From positions 1 to 64,000 of the forward strand of contig OW569345.1 of the NCBI GenBank assembly GCA_937625935.1: a stretch of DNA of 64,000 nucleotides, in the 5' to 3' direction. Origin of the DNA: Tetramitus jugosus (taxonomy: Eukaryota > Protista > Heterolobosea). The first letter of the stretch is position 1. Each line of letters opens with the position of its first letter. The position numbers and the translations under genes are program-made. This document shows positions 1-11,098 of the stretch, one piece after another. The notes beneath the pieces are model-generated. The model saw only the letters and a program-made list of their open reading frames with translations, was not told where the DNA came from and searched no databases.

Positions 1-833
1 CCAAACCCAAACCCAAACCCAAACCCAAACCCAAACCCAAACCCAAACCCATACCCAATCCCAAACCCAAACCCAAACCCAAACCCAAACCCAAACCCAA
101 ACCCATACCCAAACCCAAACCCAAACCCAAACCCAAACCCAAACCCAAACCCAAACCCAAACCCAAACCCAAACCCAAACCCAAACCCAAACCCAAACCC
201 AAACCCAAACCCAAACCCAAACCCAAACCCAAACCCAAACCCAAACCCAAACCCAAACCCAAACCCAAACCCAAACCCAAACCCAAACCCAAACCCAAAC
301 CCAAACCCAAACCCAAACCCAAACCCAAACCCAAACCCAAACCCAAACCCAAACCCAAACCCAAACCCAAACCCAAACCCAAACCCAAACCCAAACCCAA
401 ACCCAAACCCAAACCCAAACCCAAACCCAAACCCAAACCCAAACCCAAACCCAAACCCAAACCCAAACCCAAACCCAAACCCAAACCCAAACCCAAACCC
501 AAACCCAAACCCAAACCCAAACCCAAACCCAAACCCAAACCCAAACCCAAACCCAAACCCAAACCCAAACCCAAACCCAAACCCAAACCCAAACCCAAAC
601 CCAAACCCAAACCCAAACCCAAACCCAAACCCAAACCCAAACCCAAACCCAAACCCAAACCCAAACCCAAACCCAAACCCAAACCCAAACCCAAACCCAA
701 ACCCAAACCCAAACCCAAACCCAAACCCAAACCCAAACCCAAACCCAAACCCAAACCCAAACCCAAACCCAAACCCAAACCCAAACCCAAACCCAAACCC
801 AAACCCAAACCCAAACCCAAACCCAAACCCAAA
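1..833 (+). repeat. Telomeric repeat array (CCCAAA)n / (TTTGGG)n, about 139 units, chromosome left end
   Basis: Near-perfect tandem CCCAAA from base 1 to 833, C-rich strand at the 5' end of the contig. Three variant units lie near the tip: CCCATA 48-53, CCCAAT 54-59, CCCATA 102-107. Confidence 0.97.
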
Positions 834-1420
834 TCAACTTTCTTTTCAAAAATCAAAAATTTCATCCAAATTCAAAATAGAATCGATCTATCATCTAAAA
901 TCTTATCAAACAAGATTAATGAAAGTTCAAATCACTCAGTCCATTTCTATATCCATCTCTTGACATTCACTCCTCACTCTTTGTCGAAAACGGAAATTCT
1001 CTCATTCAATGCTCAACATCTGGATGTTTTTGAAGCAATCTAGTGAGTTAATATATGTTGAATGAGTAATCATTCCTACTTCTCTTCAGTTATGATGGGT
1101 TGGGTCTGGGTATTCAACTCTGCATTCAAGAAAAACACAAAATTTGAGTTCTCATACTGTCAGAGTTCAAATCTCTTATAAGAAGAACTTTTGAAAAAGC
1201 TTTCCAGTCTATTACATCTATAAATCTGAATTGTCATTCAGAAAAGCTAGTAGTCTGTATTTCTGACCCGTTGGATCTTCAAGCTAGATTCAGATTTGAA
1301 ACTTCACTATTTCACTGACTTACAGGATTTTAAAGCGAAAGGTCTCAATAATACATAGAATATCTGATTCTACTGTGATTCTATAATAAAAACTGCCGAT
1401 TCTATTCCTAAAAACGCGAA

Positions 1421-1470
1421 ATCAAGTCAGTCAAAATTTCAGAAACATCAAGTCATAAGACATCAAGTCA
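1421..1470 (+). repeat. Short direct repeats ATCAAGTCA x3
   Basis: ATCAAGTCA at 1421-1429; ACATCAAGTCA at 1445-1455 and 1460-1470. Confidence 0.6.
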
Positions 1471-1812
1471 AAAAATATAGTTAGTAGGAAATCATGTTAA
1501 AAATGATCAAATAATGTCCCAATACTCTGATCTAAAACAAAGAAATCATTTGTCACTAGTACGTCTTATCTCCAGTACAGACTCAAAATCGTCTAAACTC
1601 TGTTGCAGTTTTAACACTGTTGCCGATAAAAATCTGTTAAATACAGCACAGATATATCGGCTCTACGAGCCGATAAAGCTCAAATCGAGTTGAAAACCAC
1701 GCCAATCTCTTTATCTCAACCAGCTGAAGCTCCTAGAGCAATAAAAAATCTCAAAAAAAAAATTACCATATAAGGAAATCGTTTCCTTAGGTTGGGGAAT
1801 CCAGGATGTATC

Positions 1813-1834
1813 CCCAAACCCAAACCCAACCCAA
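1813..1834 (+). repeat. Interstitial telomere-like tract
   Basis: CCCAAACCCAAACCCAACCCAA in the same orientation as the terminal array. A related G-strand tract GGGTTGGGTCTGGG lies at 1097-1110. Confidence 0.8.
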
Positions 1835-2087
1835 TAGTGAGAACTGTACATTCAAATCTGTTGCTTGTTGCTGACTGTTGTTTGAGAACTGTTGTTCGCT
1901 CATACCTTGGATTCGTTGTACTTACCTCTTCAGATTGTCTTCGCACTTTTTATCTTCTTCTTCTTCCTGTCTGTTACAAAAATAGTGCGGAAATTGTAAC
2001 AACAAGAAACTTCCGCTGCAACGTCATATCATCAATGCAGGAGACAAGCAAATCAACAAAGACAACAAGAGTTTACATACAATCGAT

Positions 2088-4352
2088 ATGCCACGAGTCG
2101 TATATCAATGCAGACGTTGCAATGAATCTTTCTACTCTCGTGGTGGTAGACTCAAACATGAGAAGAAACATCTACGGGATAACAGTAATGGAACTGCAGA
2201 CAGTGAGTGTGAGTCATTTGGTGGAAATGGTATGATGGATAACGACTTCTTTGAAGAAGAATCATCCGATAGGAGCAGTATGCAGTCTGATGTTCAGAAT
2301 ACACCACAGTTTGATCATATGCTGATTCAGAACACGCTGTTAGACAAGTTACTTCAACATGCAATGGTTTCAGAAACTCAGCATGGAGTACCACGTACAT
2401 CAGTTGATGAAACATTGCATTTGATATGTGACAGTATAAAGTACATTGGTAGAAACTTCGATGATGATACCAGAGAGAAAATTGTTAATTGTATTCCCAG
2501 TATCAGTATATTGTTGAATGATAAGAAGAGAGATGAGGAGATTGCAAAGAGATTCTTTGATTGTAAACCAGAAGAGGCCACTTATGGTGAACATACAATG
2601 TACTATCTGCCCCTGCAAGGATTGCTCGCTAGATTGTTTAAGAAGAATGTAGAATGGGTAGAATCATCTGCGCAGCGCAGATCAGATATTGGGAAATACA
2701 ATGATATTTGTGATGGATCAGTAGTAAGAGACTCAGAATTCTTTCAGAAGTATGATGATGCACTTCAGTTTTTATTATATCTGGATGAGTGTTATTTGAA
2801 AGATCGAACAGAATATTTGATGGTGTATTGCACGATTGGCAAGTTTCCAATATACACCAGATGTCAACTGCACAACATTCTACCGATGGCTGCAATTCCA
2901 ACAAAGTTAATGAAGAGTGCAGGGGATGGAATATTATTACCTATATTGTCAGAATTTGTTCCATTCGCTTCTGATGGAGTGGACATAAAGATATACAACA
3001 ACACTTATCGAAAGTTTAGGGGACAAGTTGTCGTTGTATTACTTGATCACAAAGCAGCTCACGAGCTTGGTGGATTCTCTACCTCTTTCTCGAACATGAA
3101 GCGATTCTGTAGACACTTTCTGCATCGTAAAGATATTGGCAGCACTGACCAGAACAAATTCACTCCTCGAACACCGGATGTACATGATCAGATTGTTGCA
3201 GCTCTGGAGAGTGCAGTGGATGTGGATGGACTCAAATCCATGTACGGAGTCCAGAAGTATTCTGTGTTGAATGAGATTCCAAACTTTCATGTTATCACTA
3301 ATCTGCCACCAGATCTGATGCATACAGAATTCGAAGGAGAGTTAAAGCAAGAGTTTTGTTCCTTCCTGCAGTATGGTACGAACAATAGATGGTTTACATT
3401 AGCTGAATTCAATCACCAATTGACTTCGTGGAGGGAGCTACTTGATCTGAAGTCATTTGTACCAGTAGATATATCAGAGAAATTCAGTAACAATCCTAGT
3501 TCCAACGAAGTGACAGCTGGACAAGTATACTCTTTGTCAACATTACTGCCATTTATTTGCACACAATTTAGCTCATGGGCTGATATTAGAGAGAGTGTTC
3601 AATTCAAATCATTAATGAAACACTTGGAATATCTAACTATCTGTCTGCAATGGTCCTTCACAGAGCCAGATCTGGTCAAACTAGATAAATTATTGAAAGA
3701 GCATGTGCAGCTCTGGGGTGAAGCTTATTCACATTCATATCGTCCAAAGTCTCACTATCGATTGCATTTCATAGAAGCAATCAGAGCATTTGGACCACTG
3801 GTGGGTATATACTGTATGAGATATGAAGCAAAGCATCAACTGATGAAACGTTTTGTATCTAACTCCAACAATCGCAATGATGCTAGAGCAATCTTGATCA
3901 AATCTCTGAAGCACATGGCGACAGTAGATCACACTGCATGCAGTGATCTCGTTCTAAAAGATCCCAGTTCTCTTTCGGACCAGGCGAGATCGAAGATATG
4001 TTCTGATTGTTCCAGATCACTTGTCACTGTCCAATCATACAAGACTGCTTCGTACAAAAACATCACGTTCAGAGTAGGTGATTTAATCACAACAAGTGAT
4101 GGGTATGCAATGGTCGATGGTATATATCAATTCAACAATGATAGAGAGTCGACTGTGTGTCGTGTCAAGCTACTGCAGTGCCTGGAGCCCATGCCCATAA
4201 TTCATTACCCTCAAATCTCTAAATCACACGTACTCTCCACTATTTACATGCCAGTCTCCAATGTGAGAGGTAAACTCTATACCATGACTGTTGGTAATCA
4301 AGGCACGCAAATGATTGTCCATGCATCATCAATGTTGATACTCAATGAATGA
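2088..4352 (+). CDS. CACTA/EnSpm (CMC superfamily) transposase with N-terminal C2H2 zinc finger
   Basis: 754 aa uninterrupted ORF. C2H2 finger YQCRRC-x12-HEKKH. CMC-type motifs: DICDG, LLYLDE (D1), LLDHKAAHELGGF (D2), RFCRH, PPDLMH..FEG, RPKSHYRLHF..AI.AFGP...YCMRYEAKH (E). Confidence 0.85.
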   Translation: MPRVVYQCRRCNESFYSRGGRLKHEKKHLRDNSNGTADSECESFGGNGMMDNDFFEEESSDRSSMQSDVQNTPQFDHMLIQNTLLDKLLQHAMVSETQHGVPRTSVDETLHLICDSIKYIGRNFDDDTREKIVNCIPSISILLNDKKRDEEIAKRFFDCKPEEATYGEHTMYYLPLQGLLARLFKKNVEWVESSAQRRSDIGKYNDICDGSVVRDSEFFQKYDDALQFLLYLDECYLKDRTEYLMVYCTIGKFPIYTRCQLHNILPMAAIPTKLMKSAGDGILLPILSEFVPFASDGVDIKIYNNTYRKFRGQVVVVLLDHKAAHELGGFSTSFSNMKRFCRHFLHRKDIGSTDQNKFTPRTPDVHDQIVAALESAVDVDGLKSMYGVQKYSVLNEIPNFHVITNLPPDLMHTEFEGELKQEFCSFLQYGTNNRWFTLAEFNHQLTSWRELLDLKSFVPVDISEKFSNNPSSNEVTAGQVYSLSTLLPFICTQFSSWADIRESVQFKSLMKHLEYLTICLQWSFTEPDLVKLDKLLKEHVQLWGEAYSHSYRPKSHYRLHFIEAIRAFGPLVGIYCMRYEAKHQLMKRFVSNSNNRNDARAILIKSLKHMATVDHTACSDLVLKDPSSLSDQARSKICSDCSRSLVTVQSYKTASYKNITFRVGDLITTSDGYAMVDGIYQFNNDRESTVCRVKLLQCLEPMPIIHYPQISKSHVLSTIYMPVSNVRGKLYTMTVGNQGTQMIVHASSMLILNE

Positions 4353-4366
4353 CGTGACCACAGTTT

Positions 4367-4513
4367 TTACCGCGTTTCTGTTCCTACAATTTACAACGAA
4401 TATTCAAACCTGGTAAAATTAGACCGGTAACCGTGCAATTACCACGTTCAACTGGCAAACGTGGTAATGTTCACTGGTATACCGCATTGCATATACCACG
4501 TTCGCTGGTAGTG
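4367..4513. repeat. CACTA subterminal repeat cluster and terminal inverted repeat (right end)
   Basis: Motif TTACCACGTT in both orientations: TTACCGCGTT 4367-4376, AACCTGGTAA 4407-4416, TTACCACGTT 4439-4448, AACGTGGTAA 4458-4467, ATACCACGTT 4493-4502. GTTC(A/G)(A)CTGG occurs three times. Terminal TAGTG. Confidence 0.8.
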
Positions 4514-5113
4514 GACTGGAGCTTGCATTCGAGACAGTTCTATTGAGAAAAGCACCCGTTCTTCCACTTGCCAAAGCTTTGCATTCACATCTGTATCATC
4601 ACCATGTAGTACTGCCTCGGTTCACAGCAGTTAAAACCCTGTCTCCTGGTCTGTATCGTATTCAACAATGATCACAATAATTAACCTTGGAATGATGAGA
4701 GTTAGAGTCTCTGACTCACTTCCTACCACACATTGTTTGCTAAACGAAATAATTTCATTTTCACGATTGAAGAATAATAATCTTTCGAAGTTTCAAGTGT
4801 AAAACTCTCCGATAAACGTCACGAGTCGCAATCCTTTTTTAACAAATAAGGAAGTCGTGCTATATAGGATCCCTGAAAATCTCCCCCTAGGTGTCTCCAC
4901 CCGAGGATATCCTTTATCCATTCGGTTTATTCGATGGAACAACACAAGAACATGAGGATAGAACAATACGAATATGAAAAATCTTTTTTGCTTTTTTGTC
5001 GGTTGTAGTTTGATCATTAGGGAACATGAAGTTCCAAGTAAGGTTTAAATTCTATTAACTCGTCCAGCGAGAAGTGTAACTGAATCAAACTAATCAACCA
5101 ACAATATATACTA

Positions 5114-8100
5114 ATGAAAGTAATCTTGTACACATTGTTTGTTTTATTGTGTGTCATAGTTCTCGGTGACTTGACAGTACAACAAGGAGTGAAGTTTGCT
5201 GGTCTTTACTTCAGTGGTTCTCTGTTGCCACAAACCAAACCAGCAAGGCCAGTGGATATCAGTGAAATTGCTAACACCACTACTCTTCATATTTCTTCTG
5301 GTCCCTCATCTGGTTCTATGGTTGTGACTGAAGATGGGAGAGTGTTTGTTTGGGGAAGCAATTGGGATAAAAATTTGGGTCTTGGTGCGGGTGCCAACAA
5401 CAACATCTATACTCCAACACAAGTCAAAGGATTGCTCGTCGGACAAAAGGTAGTGCATGGATCTATGGGAGGCTACCATGCATTGGTAGTAACTACTGAA
5501 GGTCAAGTGTATGCTTGGGGTCTAAATTCTCAACGACAGCTTGGAGATGGAACAACAACTTTTAGTGAAGTTCCTGTCCTTGTTGATTTGACAGTCGCTC
5601 CTCTCAACGAAACCTTTATTGTTCGAGTAGCTGCTGGTTCCTCACTCTCCTATGCTTTGGGTTCGAATGGTAAGGTGTATCAATGGGGAGGAAACGCTGC
5701 TCCAAAAGAGGTTGGAGGAGCTCTCGCGGGAAAGTTTGTAACTCAAATTCATGCACGAAGTACTCTAGTCGTTGCTTTGACCAATGAAGGAAGAGCGTAT
5801 TCTTGGGGTGCTAATGCTAAAGGGCAATTGGGCGATGGTACAACCACTACTCAAGTTAATCCAGTTGCTGTCAAAGTAGACGGACTTCTGAGGAATAAGA
5901 ACATTACCAAATTGTCTACTGGTGAACAACAAGTTATGGCAATCACTAGTGATGGTGAAGTGGTTTCATGGGGTTCAAACTTCTATGGAAGTCTCGGTGA
6001 AGGAACTTTTCAATTTTCTAATGTACCCAGGCCCGTTTATACCGGTGGTGCACTACGTGGAAAGACAATGATTGCAGTCTCGGTCGGTCGATACTTCACA
6101 GTTGCAGTTTCCAGTGATGGGAAGTTGTTTGCGTGGGGAGCAAGTAGTGCAGGACAACTAAACTATGGTGGGTATGACGAACAGCAGATACTACCGATTG
6201 AAGTTGACATGAATGGACCATTGAGTGGAAAGAAGATTGTTGAAGTTTCCTGTGGTGATTCTATGACTATCGTTAAAGACTCTGAAGGATTCCTTTACTC
6301 TTGGGGCAATGATGAATTTGGGCAATTGGGACACAATGATGATAGAACCAAACTCCAATTAATGAAATGGCAAGAAAGTCACAAGGTGAAATCACGGAGC
6401 ATTATATCCATTGGTGTGAGTCAGGATCATTCTATGGTTAGTACAAAAGGAGGGCTCTATGCCTGGGGAGGTTCACTCAATTCGTGGTTTGATTATGGTT
6501 ACACCCTTGGCTCAGATACGATATTCGCTGAACAATCAACTGAAGTGGAACTGAATCAAACTCTCATTCAACTAACCACTGGATATGCTTTCACAATGGC
6601 ATTGACTGGTGATGGATCATTGTTTGCATTTGGTGCCAATGGAGACGGACAATTGGGTGATGGTACATTTACCAGCAGAGAAAGACCATTTCAAGTCAAT
6701 ATGAGTGCTGTATTGAATGGAAGTGTAATAACACAAGTAGCTGCGGGATCATATCACACAGTGGTACTCACTGACAAATCAGAGATATTTAACTGGGGAA
6801 GTTTTTGGCCAAATACACCCACGCGTGTAAATGGTTCTTTGATGACTAACAAGACAATAATTCAAATTGCTTCAGGTGGTTCATTCTCATTGGCACTTAG
6901 CGACGATGGAAAGATTTATGGATGGGGAGACAACTCGGATGGGCAACTAGGACCTGATTTAGGTTTTTTTGCTGACCCTATCAATGTGGATAAGAATGGA
7001 GTTCTTGTGAACAAGACTGTAGTTAAAATCGGAGCAGGACAAAGTCACGTTATCGCATTGACTGATGAAGGAGAAGTGTTTACATTTGGTGCAGGAGGGA
7101 ACGGGCAACTAGGACATGGTAATACTAATTCCCTAAACTCACCAACTGCTGTGAGTCTTCTTCAAAACAAAACTATTGTACAAATTGCTGCAGGATATTC
7201 CCACTCAGCCGCTCTTGATTCAGAAGGAAACGTGTATACATGGGGTGAAAATTCTTACGGTAATCTTGCTGATGAATCAACATCATCAAAGAACTCACCA
7301 GTTTTGATTCCTACTCCTGGTCAAAATGAGGTTTTACAAATTTTTGCTGGAGGTGAAAATACCATGGTTCTTATTAATCATTGTAATGATGGATACTATG
7401 GTAAACATTGTGACCAATTCACTTGTGCTGGAATTTTGCCTCAGAATGCGTCAGTATGTTCTCATAGAGGCAGTTGTGTTGGAGGTAATAACTGCACTTG
7501 CTCCGGTGGATACTATGGAAGTAATTGTGAGAAATTTGATTGTTTCTCCATGAATTTCAACAGCTCCAATGTTTGCTCTAGTCATGGCTTATGTCTAGAT
7601 GTTGATAATTGCTCGTGCTCTGCTCCTTATTATGGGTCAAATTGTGAACACTATGATTGTTTCAATGTTTCTCTTACTAATTCTCAGGTTTGCTCTAGCC
7701 ATGGTTCATGCATTGATTTTGATACTTGTCATTGTGCCGATGGATATTATGGTAGTAGATGTGAGCAGTTTAACTGTTTTTCTGTGAACAAAAACAATGC
7801 GAGTGTCTGTTCAAACCATGGTTCGTGCATTGATTTCGACAATTGTTCCTGCTCACATGGATTTTACGGAAACAACTGTGAACAATTCTATTGCTTTGAT
7901 GAAAAGCACAACAGCTCCAATACTTGTTCAAGTCATGGCTCGTGTATTGACTTTGACAAATGTACATGCTTTGATGGACATTATGGTGTGAAGTGTGATC
8001 AATTTGATTGTTTCTTAGTGAACCATAATAGTTCTCAAGTATGTTCTGGTCATGGTTCATGCTTTGATGTTAATCAATGTCATTGTTCCAATCAATTCTC

Positions 8101-11098
8101 TGGTATCGATTGCTCTATTCCTAGGTGCTTCCAGATTCCGGCAGATAATTCATCCACATGCTCCGGAAATGGAGAATGCACGTCTCCAGATTCATGTGCT
8201 TGTGAAACTGATTATTTTGGTGTCCAATGCGAACATTTGAGACCTGTTGCTATCGTACCCGTCAATCAGAGTTTTACCTATTGTAGTGATTTGGTTCTGA
8301 ATGGATCTCTTTCATACTCACACAATGGAAATGAACCATTGTTGTACAGCTGGAAAGCTTTGGGTCCGAACACAACTCAGATCAATATGATTTTAGAAAA
8401 CCAAACAGTTCCTATAGCAACTATTCCAGCAAGAATGATGGAAAGAGGAAAGATCATTCAATTCCAATTGATTGTAACAACTCAAAGTGGTGTTCCATCA
8501 CAACCAATTACTTTTGGACGACAAAGATCCAATGACATTTTGACTGACTTGTTCATTAATATTGGGGGACCATCTGTGCAAAAGACTTTTATCGCTCAAA
8601 GCTTTGCTTTGAATGGATATGCTCAATTTGATTCTTGTGTGCCTTTTGACAAAAGATCAACTTTGGAATATTCATGGAATCAATTGAATGGTCTGTCTGC
8701 CCAGGGAAGAGCGTCTGGGTCTGATTTGATTTTCGAACCAAACGCATTCCAATCAGTTGGTAGTTATGAATTTGAGTTTAGAGTGACAACAGCTCAGAGT
8801 ATCTTAGTCCTCACTCAAACTGTGGTTGTTCAGGTAATGATGAGAGATTTGGTTGCTTCAATTGAGGGTGGCGATCGAAGTGTAGCATTTGACTCTCCAA
8901 TGATCCTCAAAGCTTCATGTTTTGATCCGGAGAGACTCTCAATTCGACCAGTTTATTCATGGAGGTGTAGTTTGAGTTCTACTGGTGGTCAATGTCCTAC
9001 TTCTATACTTAATGCTCTAAATTCTGTCAATAGTGCTACTGTTACAATTCCTTCAAGGGCAATGACAGAATCAAACTCGTACAACGTCTGTGTCTCATAC
9101 AATGTTGCATCAAGATCTAATAGTGATTGTATCATTGTTAAAGCAACTAATTCTCTCATCCCTCTTGTAGCATTCACCTCAACACCAGGGTTCTACATCT
9201 CCAAAGAAGCTTCACCAACAATTTCATTCAGAATTCGAATTCAAGCACAGACATCATACACTTGTCACTGGTTGCTCAATGATTCGATCATTAGTACAAG
9301 CATGATGAGAAATATGATGAAGAACAGTTTGTCTCTCTATTCTTCAGGTCTGATTCCAGGTGAAACATATGCTCTAGAAGTCAGATGCACAGATTCACAG
9401 AATAGAACTGGTTCTTCCGTCACTAGATTCAGTGTTAACACCGCACCACATTCGGGAATAATTGAAGTGGAACCCAAGAGCGGAGTTGCTTTGGACACAG
9501 AGTTTCAATTTTTGGCAACTGGATGGATTGATTCTGATGAACCACTCACATACCAATGGACTTTGAATTCCGATGAGTTCAATGATGATTCATTGTTCCA
9601 TTTTAGTGCAAGTGTTGAACCTTCTCTCAAAACGAAATTACCTGCAGGAAACTTTTCACTCGTCTTAACTGTGAGAGATAGATTTGGTGCTCAATCACAA
9701 GCAGTAGAAAGGATCACTGTTTCTAAACCAGATACGTCGCTCATCGACAAAGTGTCTGATGTAGTGAATGAATTCGACCTGGTCAATAACATTGGATATC
9801 ATGGACTCAGAAATTGGATGATTCTGAGTGACATTGTAGTTCATGTCTTGAGAAACGATCAACCAAAATCAAGAAGAGTGTCTTCTTCTTCGAATAACCA
9901 AACTTCAATGATTGAAAGAATGGTAACAGTCACGGAATCACTCTTTAGAGATATTGTAAAGGAACAAGGAGTTGATATTTCATTATTTGAGCAATTGAGT
10001 TCAAATTCATTGAAGTATACTCCATCACAGAATGAGGTCAACTTGTTGACACAAGAAACCATCGCATCTCTCATGTCAATGACACAAATAACAGTTGCCG
10101 AATGTAAGAAAATGATGATCAATGCCATGTCATCCTCTCCACCTAGTCAGATCAAGTTTAGCAACATTATTCAGAATGTTGTTCAGATGCTCAATCAATT
10201 AGTCTTCATCGATTCTGCTTCTATTTCTGTTTCACTATTGGATGAAATTCAAACTCTTGTTGCTCATGGTTTAGAATTGAACTCCAATGAGATTTATGGA
10301 GGATTCAATGATGTTAGATTGTTCTCTTCAATGTTCTCAAGTGATTTATTGATTCAAACCAAATTCTTGGCTTCCATTCCAATGCAAGGCAATGATCAAA
10401 TAGGTATTTCCTCCTCTGATACAGTATCTCTTGACCAATGGAAGAAGAACGATGAAGATATATTTGTGCTTTCCAAGATCCTCTCCAAAGCTCACATTCC
10501 CTCCATTCTTTCCTCTTATCAAGAGTCTATCAACTCAACAATTGTTTCTGAGGTTGCTGTTTCTGCTCAAATTTACACCACAATTGAGAAAGCTTATATC
10601 AATAATGTGAGTATTACCATCCCAGCTTCAATCCCTATTGCCAGACGAACCATGTTACAAGAACAGGAACAATTTGAACCTCGTTGTACATACTTTGACA
10701 ATGTGAGTAGAACGTGGATGCAAGATACCAATGTATGTGCCCTTGTCCAAGCATCTTCTCACAATGTGACCTGTTCCTGTACAGTTTCAACAGGAGATGA
10801 ACCATCATTTGTCATGGTCACATATGACAAGTTAATCTCTTCACCTCCTTCGCCAGATTCTCCCAACTCTGTAAAGACCAATTCTCGTGCCACTGCCATT
10901 GGTCTCGGTGTGGGTCTAGGTCTTGGAATTCCACTTGCCATTGTCTTGTTGCTTCTCATGTTGGTTGGTGCATTCCTGGCATTCATGCAATGTGGCCGTA
11001 AAACATTGGCCAAGAGCAAAGCCAAAACAGATACGCATGATGAAATGAATAACGATACAAGAATTGAAATGGTGGTGGTTCAGAATAACGAACAATAA
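5114..11098 (+). CDS. Single-pass surface receptor/adhesion protein: signal peptide, RCC1/BLIP-II repeats, EGF-like repeats, PKD/REJ region, GPS-like motif, TM helix
   Basis: Hydrophobic N-terminus. About 13 repeats of the type G.VY.WG.N..GQLG. About 8 repeats of CS.HG.C....C.C..GYYG..C. REJ-like VNTAPHSGIIEVEP..G..L.T.F. GPS-like CTYFDN..RTW....C......VTCSC. TM segment IGLGVGLGLGIPLAIVLLLLMLVGAFLAF, then a short tail. Confidence 0.85.
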   Translation: MKVILYTLFVLLCVIVLGDLTVQQGVKFAGLYFSGSLLPQTKPARPVDISEIANTTTLHISSGPSSGSMVVTEDGRVFVWGSNWDKNLGLGAGANNNIYTPTQVKGLLVGQKVVHGSMGGYHALVVTTEGQVYAWGLNSQRQLGDGTTTFSEVPVLVDLTVAPLNETFIVRVAAGSSLSYALGSNGKVYQWGGNAAPKEVGGALAGKFVTQIHARSTLVVALTNEGRAYSWGANAKGQLGDGTTTTQVNPVAVKVDGLLRNKNITKLSTGEQQVMAITSDGEVVSWGSNFYGSLGEGTFQFSNVPRPVYTGGALRGKTMIAVSVGRYFTVAVSSDGKLFAWGASSAGQLNYGGYDEQQILPIEVDMNGPLSGKKIVEVSCGDSMTIVKDSEGFLYSWGNDEFGQLGHNDDRTKLQLMKWQESHKVKSRSIISIGVSQDHSMVSTKGGLYAWGGSLNSWFDYGYTLGSDTIFAEQSTEVELNQTLIQLTTGYAFTMALTGDGSLFAFGANGDGQLGDGTFTSRERPFQVNMSAVLNGSVITQVAAGSYHTVVLTDKSEIFNWGSFWPNTPTRVNGSLMTNKTIIQIASGGSFSLALSDDGKIYGWGDNSDGQLGPDLGFFADPINVDKNGVLVNKTVVKIGAGQSHVIALTDEGEVFTFGAGGNGQLGHGNTNSLNSPTAVSLLQNKTIVQIAAGYSHSAALDSEGNVYTWGENSYGNLADESTSSKNSPVLIPTPGQNEVLQIFAGGENTMVLINHCNDGYYGKHCDQFTCAGILPQNASVCSHRGSCVGGNNCTCSGGYYGSNCEKFDCFSMNFNSSNVCSSHGLCLDVDNCSCSAPYYGSNCEHYDCFNVSLTNSQVCSSHGSCIDFDTCHCADGYYGSRCEQFNCFSVNKNNASVCSNHGSCIDFDNCSCSHGFYGNNCEQFYCFDEKHNSSNTCSSHGSCIDFDKCTCFDGHYGVKCDQFDCFLVNHNSSQVCSGHGSCFDVNQCHCSNQFSGIDCSIPRCFQIPADNSSTCSGNGECTSPDSCACETDYFGVQCEHLRPVAIVPVNQSFTYCSDLVLNGSLSYSHNGNEPLLYSWKALGPNTTQINMILENQTVPIATIPARMMERGKIIQFQLIVTTQSGVPSQPITFGRQRSNDILTDLFINIGGPSVQKTFIAQSFALNGYAQFDSCVPFDKRSTLEYSWNQLNGLSAQGRASGSDLIFEPNAFQSVGSYEFEFRVTTAQSILVLTQTVVVQVMMRDLVASIEGGDRSVAFDSPMILKASCFDPERLSIRPVYSWRCSLSSTGGQCPTSILNALNSVNSATVTIPSRAMTESNSYNVCVSYNVASRSNSDCIIVKATNSLIPLVAFTSTPGFYISKEASPTISFRIRIQAQTSYTCHWLLNDSIISTSMMRNMMKNSLSLYSSGLIPGETYALEVRCTDSQNRTGSSVTRFSVNTAPHSGIIEVEPKSGVALDTEFQFLATGWIDSDEPLTYQWTLNSDEFNDDSLFHFSASVEPSLKTKLPAGNFSLVLTVRDRFGAQSQAVERITVSKPDTSLIDKVSDVVNEFDLVNNIGYHGLRNWMILSDIVVHVLRNDQPKSRRVSSSSNNQTSMIERMVTVTESLFRDIVKEQGVDISLFEQLSSNSLKYTPSQNEVNLLTQETIASLMSMTQITVAECKKMMINAMSSSPPSQIKFSNIIQNVVQMLNQLVFIDSASISVSLLDEIQTLVAHGLELNSNEIYGGFNDVRLFSSMFSSDLLIQTKFLASIPMQGNDQIGISSSDTVSLDQWKKNDEDIFVLSKILSKAHIPSILSSYQESINSTIVSEVAVSAQIYTTIEKAYINNVSITIPASIPIARRTMLQEQEQFEPRCTYFDNVSRTWMQDTNVCALVQASSHNVTCSCTVSTGDEPSFVMVTYDKLISSPPSPDSPNSVKTNSRATAIGLGVGLGLGIPLAIVLLLLMLVGAFLAFMQCGRKTLAKSKAKTDTHDEMNNDTRIEMVVVQNNEQ

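What the first reader, a model, noticed from the sequence alone, without database searches (positions are those of the whole stretch)
834..4513. Single-ended CACTA transposon capped by a telomere: a possible chromosome-end-capturing element
Seen: an unbroken 754 aa CMC transposase is the first gene after the telomere. Its inner end is complete (CACTA terminus at 4513, at least five TTACCACGTT subterminal repeats), but neither the matching TIR nor the subterminal motif appears in the 1.25 kb before the telomere array. Known: CACTA elements normally have two matched ends and a 3 bp TSD; single-ended telomere-carrying transposons have been described in linear bacterial chromosomes. Inference: either the chromosome broke inside the element and was healed, or the mobile unit is telomere + subtelomere + transposase + one end, which on strand transfer would truncate and re-cap a target chromosome. 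I do not know of the second arrangement for a eukaryotic DDE element.
Basis: partly seen in the sequence, partly recalled or inferred. Interest (0 to 1): 0.85.

Follow-up and report, generated by a model that had tools for sequence, protein, structure and literature searches.

The report
Truncated CACTA transposon under standard chromosome cap
This is an ordinary two-ended jumping gene that lost its left third when the chromosome end was cut back and re-capped with the 1-kb end piece found on at least 33 of this amoeba's chromosome ends; it is not a transposon that carries a telomere.

Summary
The 1.25 kb before the ORF is not one unit. Window 834-1834 is a ~1-kb telomere-associated cap present on at least 33 contig ends. 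It always ends inward in a short telomere tract (here 1811-1834), after which each end continues into unrelated DNA. Homology between ends therefore stops at 1834, not at 4513.

The transposon family is a normal two-ended one. Complete copies with both CACTA inverted repeats exist on C11 (internal), on C32, and in another sample's contig. All carry a second gene (ORF2) divergent from the transposase. In this copy only the first 23 codons of ORF2 remain, and they run straight into the telomere tract, so about 2.7 kb including the left end was lost.

A second family copy, on C37, is cut inside the transposase by the same kind of tract. An earlier scan note (s1-533150) reports a similar healing scar on another piece of this genome.

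Verdict: this is terminal deletion and re-capping inside a transposon-rich subtelomere. The telomere-carrying mobile unit is refuted. The 1834|1835 junction was not confirmed with reads.

The parts
1..833 (.). Telomere array, (CCCAAA)n as read on the + strand (G-strand TTTGGG)
   Evidence: period 6, 138.8 copies, 99% matches. TTTGGG is the candidate telomere repeat reported for the heterolobosean Naegleria gruberi (PMC3622300).
834..1810 (.). Body of the type-A telomere-associated cap element (~1 kb, no long ORF). It is not part of the transposon.
   Evidence: 80-100% identical copies at the ends of many contigs (C8 is 100% identical over 997 bp), some in tandem; unitig depth is more than 10-fold above the single-copy region; no Rfam match.
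1811..1834 (.). Interstitial telomere tract (TCCCCAAACCCAAACCCAACCCAA). It is the inner end of the cap and the junction with chromosome-specific DNA.
   Evidence: in nearly all cap copies the homology ends in this tract and unrelated DNA follows; the tract with its cap context occurs 35 times (0 in controls), always within about 3.3 kb of a contig end and always oriented telomere to tract.
1835..1903 (-). Stub of the transposon's second gene (ORF2): ATG at 1903-1901 and 23 codons, cut off by the telomere tract
   Evidence: One search gives the translation MSEQQFSNNSQQQATDLNVQFSL; the ATG and the Q/N-rich start align with the ORF2 starts of the C32, L076 and C11 copies. The 184-bp spacing to the transposase ATG compares with 206 bp in C11. 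An open run of this length alone is not significant (P about 0.24).
1904..2087 (.). Divergent intergenic (presumed promoter) region between ORF2 and the transposase, with a conserved inverted repeat GCGGAA...TTCCGC at 1987-2016
   Evidence: the motif is conserved with C32 and with the independent contig L076. Promoter function is inferred only.
2088..4352 (+). Transposase gene: 754 aa, N-terminal C2H2 zinc finger, candidate catalytic residues D233, D320, E416
   Evidence: invariant columns in 45 homologs; 3783 homologs at E <= 0.001; family members hit Transposase_21, DUF4218 and Plavaka; dN/dS is 0.14 against the C32 copy.
4353..4513 (-). Right subterminal region and terminal inverted repeat (CACTACCAGCGAACGTGG read inward from 4513), with TACCACGTT repeats
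   Evidence: The C32 copy carries the same TACCACGT motif at both of its ends.
4514..5113 (.). Chromosome-specific flank between the transposon end and the RCC1/EGF/REJ gene (5114-11098)
   Evidence: an 82-85% paralog without the transposon lies on the other arm of the same contig (C2:683089-683929). Pfam domains of the neighbouring gene.

Best explanation
Window 1835-4513 is the right two thirds of a conventional two-ended CACTA-type (CMC superfamily) DNA transposon. The full element is about 5.1-5.5 kb, laid out as left inverted repeat, ORF2 (leftward), transposase (rightward), right inverted repeat.

This copy sat in a transposon-rich subtelomere. A terminal deletion removed everything distal to codon 23 of ORF2. 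That is about 2.7-2.8 kb, including the rest of ORF2 and the left inverted repeat.

The new end now carries the genome's standard chromosome-end structure: a short telomere tract, a ~1-kb telomere-associated cap element and the telomere.

Shown: the cap is shared by many ends and stops at 1834; the family has two ends elsewhere; this copy is cut inside ORF2; a second copy (C37) is cut inside the transposase at the same kind of tract.

Inferred: the order of events (break, seeding of a few telomere repeats, then copying of cap plus telomere from another chromosome end by recombination starting in the tract); and that the transposase ORF is intact only because the event is recent. With one end, the copy cannot transpose.
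For: - Cap distribution: copies of 834-1834 lie at the ends of many contigs, and none of them continues into the transposon.
- Cap boundary: homology ends in the telomere tract and is followed by unrelated DNA at each end.
- Cap position: 35 of 35 tract-context matches are terminal and correctly oriented, with 0 in controls.
- Recency: the C2 cap is 100% identical to the C8 cap over 997 bp, and the two diverge inside the tract.
- Recombination signature: composite multi-part caps are shared by groups of ends (C22/C34/C6/C21, C40/C20, C12/C52), as expected if whole distal structures are copied.
- Two-ended relative on C11: L063:2172-7700, both ends starting CACTACTA, with subterminal AACCAGGTAA repeats.
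- Two-ended relative on C32: about C32:456316-461427, both ends CAC(T/G)AGCCAAGGCGGTAG.
- Independent contig L076 has the same inverted repeats as C32 but different flanks.
- ORF2 lies divergently upstream of the transposase at C11, C32, C17, C33 and L076.
- The ORF2 stub and the intergenic motif of C2 align with those copies.
- The C37 copy is cut at about transposase residue 395 by a telomere tract.
- By my estimates of contig lengths (known exactly only for C5, C11, C16, C17, C32), 9-10 of 13 family loci lie within 20 kb of contig ends. Binomial P is 1e-7 or less.
Against: - The 1834|1835 junction itself was not confirmed by independent reads. The listed single-copy unitig of X1/X2 begins at 1841, 6 bp inside the junction, which is unexplained.
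- No two-ended copy of this exact subfamily (inverted repeat CACTACCAGCGAACGTGG) exists in the assembly. There are only two right ends, on C2 and C5.
- Target-site duplications, a defining mark of cut-and-paste insertion, were not seen clearly. C11 has GCT/TCT; C32 and L076 have none.
- The break falls so that the whole transposase and its upstream region survive. That could be chance or selection.
Confidence: 0.85

Rival explanations
1. One reading: telomere + subtelomere + transposase + one CACTA end form a single mobile unit that, by one-ended strand transfer, truncates and re-caps target chromosomes.
For: This copy has one end only, and it is the only intact transposase of its subfamily. 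The family is strongly enriched near chromosome ends.
Against: The cap occurs on at least 33 ends without the transposase, and homology stops at 1834. The only other copy with this right end (C5) is separated from its own, different cap by 1.5 kb of other DNA and is broken by nested insertions. Relatives have two ends. The cut lies inside ORF2 and, on C37, inside the transposase, not at a defined element boundary.
Confidence: 0.02
2. Assembly or haplotype artefact: the cap was joined to the transposon wrongly, or only some homologous chromosomes or cells have this truncation while others keep the full element.
For: The short unitigs listed do not bridge 1834|1835. The X1/X2 unitig starts at 1841, which suggests a branch in the read graph.
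Against: The same cap-tract-unique DNA layout is seen at dozens of ends. The cap is only 1 kb, so it is easy to span with long reads. Transposon unitigs have the same depth (about 60 in X1) as the flanking unique gene. No sequence matching the missing ORF2 or left end of this subfamily exists elsewhere in the assembly.
Confidence: 0.05
3. The transposase at this end is a domesticated gene kept by selection, for example for a role at chromosome ends. The loss of the left end would then be part of its immobilisation.
For: The ORF is intact and its upstream region is retained although the element cannot move. dN/dS against C32 is 0.14.
Against: Low dN/dS between transposon lineages is expected for active transposases and says nothing about this copy after truncation. 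The cap is 100% identical to C8's, so the present end can be very young. The closest copy (C5) is decaying. No orthologous single-copy gene was found.
Confidence: 0.04
4. The cap itself is the active agent: a terminal element (for example RNA-templated, primed by its telomere-complementary 3' tract on a G-rich end) that is added to broken ends. On this view the truncation and capping are one event driven by the cap, not by recombination.
For: The cap's inner end is a telomere-complementary tract. Partial copies always keep the inner end and lack outer parts. Copies stack in tandem, each joined by a tract.
Against: The cap has no ORF and no Rfam match. I did not search the genome for a reverse transcriptase. 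Identical composite caps are shared by groups of ends, which fits copying of whole distal structures by recombination. Loss from the outer side is equally explained by terminal erosion. Tract length varies between ends.
Confidence: 0.04

Closest known systems
En/Spm-CACTA transposons (CMC superfamily; Pfam Transposase_21/tnp2, DUF4218)
   Same: The family has 5'-CACTA terminal inverted repeats, clustered short subterminal repeats at both ends, a large DDE-type transposase plus a second gene, and a size of about 5 kb. Family members hit Transposase_21 and DUF4218.
   Different: The window's protein gets no Pfam hit itself. It has an N-terminal C2H2 finger. ORF2 has no recognisable domain. A 3-bp target duplication was not demonstrated. 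This copy lacks its left third.
Plavaka / KDZ group of CACTA-related transposases (Pfam PF18759)
   Same: Relatives give weak Plavaka matches, and the language-model search lists neighbouring clusters carrying Plavaka.
   Different: All matches are below Pfam's cut-off. Most close homologs carry no Pfam annotation; Rotaria (rotifer) proteins are the only named hits, and the language-model search points mainly to arthropod and chordate clusters.
Healed terminal deletions (telomere repeats added directly onto a broken gene, as described for Plasmodium falciparum subtelomeres and human 16p deletions; from my own knowledge)
   Same: Coding sequence is cut at an arbitrary codon and abuts telomere repeats (C2 ORF2 codon 23; C37 transposase about residue 395).
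   Different: Here the telomere tract is only about 20 bp and is followed outward by a 1-kb shared element before the real telomere.
Yeast Y' and other telomere-associated sequences spread between ends by recombination (from my own knowledge)
   Same: The cap is strictly terminal, near-identical between chromosome ends, forms tandem copies separated by short telomere tracts, and whole composite structures are shared by several ends.
   Different: It is only about 1 kb with no ORF (Y' encodes a helicase). At least two unrelated cap types (A; B on C5 and C37) share the same layout.
Telomere-targeted retroelements (MoTeR of Magnaporthe, 10.1101/845669; EN-deficient Penelope-like Athena elements, from my own knowledge)
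   Same: The elements sit between telomere repeats at chromosome ends, are oriented, and stack in arrays.
   Different: The cap has no reverse transcriptase gene. The copying pattern fits recombination better.

Membership tests
CACTA/En-Spm (CMC) DNA transposon | Terminal inverted repeats beginning 5'-CACTA at both ends | tested here: met
   The family meets this. Both ends are present on C11, on C32 (one arm reads CACGAG) and in L076. The window copy has only the right end.
CACTA/En-Spm (CMC) DNA transposon | Clusters of short subterminal repeats | tested here: met
   TACCACGTT occurs 5 times in 4368-4502. The same motif lies near both ends of the C32 copy. AACCAGGTAA lies at both ends of the C11 copy.
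CACTA/En-Spm (CMC) DNA transposon | DDE transposase homologous to Transposase_21 (TnpD/tnp2) | tested here: inconclusive
   The query has no Pfam hit. Of 45 aligned homologs, 9 hit Transposase_21 (best E 1e-6), 8 hit DUF4218 and 4 hit Plavaka at E <= 0.01. Invariant D233, D320 and E416 fit a DDE triad. No profile-profile or fold test was run.
CACTA/En-Spm (CMC) DNA transposon | 2-3 bp target-site duplication | tested here: inconclusive
   C11 flanks are GCT/TCT. C32 and L076 flanks are CAC/GTG, which is not a direct repeat. The window copy cannot be tested because its left flank is lost.
   Shared homology stops at 1834. The transposase block is on this end only.
   Left ends are present on C11, on C32 and in L076.
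Healed terminal deletion | Telomere repeats directly abutting a truncated gene | tested here: met
   The ORF2 stub ends at the tract. The C37 transposase is cut at a tract. Long open frames start at cap junctions on other ends.
Recombination-spread telomere-associated element (Y'-like) | Strictly terminal location, tandem copies joined by telomere tracts, near-identity between ends | tested here: met
   The mechanism (break-induced replication) was not tested.

The most novel reading that the evidence does not exclude
The ~1-kb caps (type A here, type B on C5 and C37), each ending inward in a short telomere tract, are a dedicated re-capping cassette. Any end that retains or gains a few telomere repeats acquires cap plus telomere. 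Terminal deletions into genes and transposons are therefore frequent and tolerated in this amoeba. Less likely, the cap is copied through an RNA whose 3' end pairs with the G-rich overhang. The transposon is a bystander.
Probability: 0.1. Interest if true: 0.55.

Novelty: new member of a known kind. Interest (0 to 1): 0.22.

Why it matters
The finding removes a tempting but wrong candidate for a new class of eukaryotic chromosome-end-capturing transposon.

It documents a CACTA-type family in a heterolobosean amoeba, with a zinc-finger transposase and an unnamed partner gene. It also gives a clear picture of how this organism's chromosome ends are built: telomere, ~1-kb cap, short telomere tract, then unique DNA that is often a cut gene.

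That layout is useful for annotating the other ends of this genome. It is a modest lead for people who study telomere repair outside the model organisms.

Tried and rejected
- A left-end candidate on C16 (CACTACCAGCAAACATGG, 2 mismatches) has no subterminal motifs and no similarity to any family copy, so it is a chance match.
- The inverted pairs of CACTAACAGGGAACGTGA on C53/C55, about 10 kb apart, looked like another CACTA family but are large-subunit rRNA genes.
- Rfam found nothing in 780-4700.
- Inverted repeats of the C17 copy could not be fixed within the DNA held.
- An exact-sequence look-up of the transposase in public assemblies found nothing.
The transposon-free paralog on the other arm of C2 and several subtelomeric copies could therefore not be read, and I did not try to obtain those letters another way.
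- Paper searches gave the TTTGGG repeat of Naegleria gruberi but nothing on these caps or this transposon family.
- No structure prediction or complex prediction was run, because neither would change the verdict.
Full report
**What is at the coordinates.** The window starts with a telomere, 138.8 copies of a 6-base unit read as CCCAAA on the + strand. TTTGGG has been reported as the candidate telomere repeat of the heterolobosean Naegleria gruberi (PMC3622300). Earlier notes of this scan describe the genome as that of a soil amoeba related to Acrasis and Naegleria. The window is G000:C2:1-64000 in a 26.35-Mb assembly of 56 contigs.

The first long ORF is 2088-4352, 754 aa and unbroken. On the minus strand, CACTACCAG ends at 4513. 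Just inside it the 9-mer TACCACGTT occurs three times exactly and twice with one mismatch within 135 bp. That is half of all such matches in the 64-kb window (P about 1e-11 for one given 135-bp span). No partner of this end and no copy of the motif lies in 834-2088.

**The 1.25 kb before the ORF is three different things.** A search of the whole genome with 834-4700 shows that only the first ~1000 bases, window 834-1834, are repeated. They occur at 80-100% identity at the starts and ends of many contigs, sometimes in tandem. None of these copies continues into the transposon.

I oriented 27 of these ends with the telomere on the left. Homology to the window stops in a short telomere tract, typically CCCCAAACCCAAACCCAACCCA, which is 1811-1834 here. 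Each end then runs into unrelated DNA.

The tract with 8 bases of cap context occurs 35 times in the genome (<=2 mismatches) and 0 times in the reversed-pattern control. Every match lies within about 3.3 kb of a contig end and is oriented from telomere to tract. Unitig depth over 834-1939 is more than ten-fold that of the single-copy part.

So 834-1834 is a general chromosome-end cap and does not belong to the transposon. A second, unrelated cap type with the same layout (telomere, ~1 kb, telomere tract) sits on C5 and C37.

**The transposon family has two ends.** A six-frame search with the 754-aa protein finds the following:
- intact paralogs on C32 (69% identity), C11 (53%) and C17 (35%);
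- fragments on C5, C17, C19, C33, C37, C35 and C11.

The C11 copy lies 98 kb from the contig start. It is bounded by CACTACTAGCGG... on the left and CACTACTAACAG... on the right (read inward), with AACCAGGTAA repeats inside both ends. It spans L063:2172-7700, about 5.5 kb.

The C32 copy is bounded by CACTAGCCAAGGCGGTAG and CACGAGCCAAGGCGGTAG, at about C32:456316 and 461427. It carries TACCACGT repeats near both ends.

A contig from another public sample (L076, 5605 bp) encodes a protein 68% identical to the window's transposase. It has the same two inverted repeats as C32 but different flanks, so it is an independent insertion.

In all of these copies a second gene, ORF2 (587-887 aa, no Pfam domain), lies upstream of the transposase on the opposite strand.

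**Where the window copy is cut.** On the minus strand an ATG at 1903-1901 opens a frame of 23 codons (MSEQQFSNNSQQQATDLNVQFSL) that runs straight into the telomere tract at 1834|1835. An open run of that length is not significant on its own (P about 0.24). The context is what supports it:
- The ATG lies 184 bp from the transposase ATG, against 206 bp in C11.
- The intergenic region aligns with those of C32 and L076, including a conserved inverted repeat (GCGGAA...TTCCGC, window 1987-2016).
- The ATG and the Q/N-rich start line up with the ORF2 starts of the other copies.

In C32 and C11 the left inverted repeat lies 2970 and 3056 bp upstream of the transposase start. Here only 253 bp remain, so about 2.7-2.8 kb is missing. 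That missing part comprises the rest of ORF2, the left subterminal region and the left inverted repeat.

**The right end is a genuine terminus.** The exact 18-base end occurs only on C2 and C5, both as right ends. The two copies are 96% identical up to TAGTG and unrelated beyond it. The flank 4515-5112 has an 82-85% paralog without the transposon on the other arm of the same contig, and that paralog begins 1 bp from the terminus. A unitig of run X3 spans 4425-4607 with no difference.

The C5 copy is a wreck. It starts at the equivalent of window 2214, is interrupted by 3.3-kb and 1.4-kb insertions (one a piggyBac-like DDE_Tnp_1_7 fragment), and carries an 810-bp deletion.

**A second case, and the setting.** On C37 the layout runs as follows: telomere, a ~200-bp element ending in a tract, a type-B cap, then a tract (...CCCAAACCCAAACCC) that abuts a transposase of this family cut at about residue 395, inside the catalytic region.

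By my estimates of contig lengths (known exactly only for C5, C11, C16, C17 and C32), nine or ten of the 13 loci that hold transposase or ORF2 sequence lie within 20 kb of a contig end, against 8.5% of the genome (P <= 1e-7).

Other ends show long open frames that begin right at the cap junction (at least 499, 481 and 177 codons at C17 start, C48 end and C16 start). This suggests that genes are cut there too. Cuts fall inside ORF2 and inside the transposase, not at transposon termini. This argues against transposase-made breaks and for deletions at arbitrary positions in DNA that happens to be full of these elements.

**How the end was probably rebuilt (inferred).** Four observations bear on this:
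- The C2 cap is identical to the C8 cap over 997 bp, and the two diverge only inside the tract.
- Tract length varies between ends, from two to more than ten repeats.
- Partial caps always keep the inner end and lack outer parts.
- Identical composite caps are shared by sets of ends (C22/C34/C6/C21; C40/C20; C12/C52).

This fits a known scheme, that of yeast Y' elements. A shortened or healed end with a few telomere repeats invades the tract at the inner border of a cap on another chromosome, then copies the cap and telomere. An RNA-templated addition is not excluded, but the evidence favours it less.

Because the cap can be very young, the intact transposase ORF needs no special explanation. 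dN/dS of 0.14 against C32 and 0.29 against C5 reflects selection on transposase lineages, not on this immobile copy.

**What the protein is.** Pfam does not recognise the window's protein. It has 3783 homologs at E <= 0.001 in the 1.8-billion-protein library. Only Rotaria (rotifer) proteins among the sequence hits carry a name, and the language-model search points to arthropod and chordate clusters. Of 45 aligned members, 9 match Transposase_21 (the En/Spm tnp2 family), 8 match DUF4218 and 4 match Plavaka. D233, D320 and E416 are invariant, and the N-terminus is a C2H2 finger. With the CACTA ends and subterminal repeats, this places the family in the CMC superfamily. A target-site duplication was not demonstrated.

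**Open points.** The listed single-copy unitig of X1/X2 starts at 1841, 6 bp inside the junction. I could not see what branches there. The junction therefore rests on the assembly and on the recurrence of the same layout at dozens of ends.

**Verdict.** The features are real and the mundane alternative is right. This is a terminally truncated copy of a normal CACTA-type transposon under the genome's standard chromosome cap. The scan had already noted a similar 'healing fossil' on another piece of this genome (s1-533150). I did not check whether it is the C37 locus.

Noticed in passing
window 834-1834; contig ends listed: Many chromosome ends are built as telomere, ~1-kb non-coding cap, then a ~20-bp telomere tract. 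At least two unrelated cap types share this layout (type A here; type B on C5 and C37). Some caps are stacked in tandem, and composite caps are shared by groups of ends.
   Followed up: partly
L046:1480-1740 (C37:2328-2588): A transposase of the same family is cut at about residue 395, inside the catalytic region, exactly at a telomere tract that ends a type-B cap. This is a second truncated copy at a chromosome end.
   Followed up: yes
L019 (C17 start), L028 (C48 end), L020 (C16 start): Open reading frames of at least 499, 481 and 177 codons run straight from the cap junction. They may be other genes cut by terminal deletions. The unique DNA at C17 start and at C6 end begins with similar sequence, so some ends also share DNA beyond the cap.
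   Followed up: no
L066:7087-8163 (C5): A piggyBac-like transposase fragment (DDE_Tnp_1_7, E 8e-18) is nested inside the degraded C5 copy of the CACTA element.
   Followed up: partly
window 4514-5113 and C2:683089-683929: The flank of the transposon has an 82-85% inverted paralog on the other arm of the same contig, without the transposon. It could not be fetched.
   Followed up: partly
L056, L057 (C53) and C55: Large-subunit rRNA genes lie in inverted pairs about 10 kb apart on the small contigs C53 and C55. They appeared as false CACTA-like hits.
   Followed up: partly
window 1987-2016: An inverted repeat GCGGAA...TTCCGC lies in the ORF2/transposase intergenic region. It is conserved in the C32 copy and in an independent contig of another sample, and may be a shared regulatory or binding site.
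   Followed up: no
window 1841 (runs X1, X2): The single-copy unitig over the transposon's left part begins 6 bp inside the cap junction rather than in the cap. This hints at a branch in the read graph, either a short repeat elsewhere or a second junction variant.
   Followed up: no
window 1092-1112 and 1818-1833: The cap holds an inverted telomere-like motif (TGGGTTGGGTCTGGGT) that is 94% complementary to the tract at its inner end, 706 bp away.
   Followed up: no
window 5114-11098: An intron-free 1994-aa gene with RCC1-like propellers, teneurin-type EGF repeats and a REJ domain is the first chromosome-specific gene at this end.
   Followed up: no
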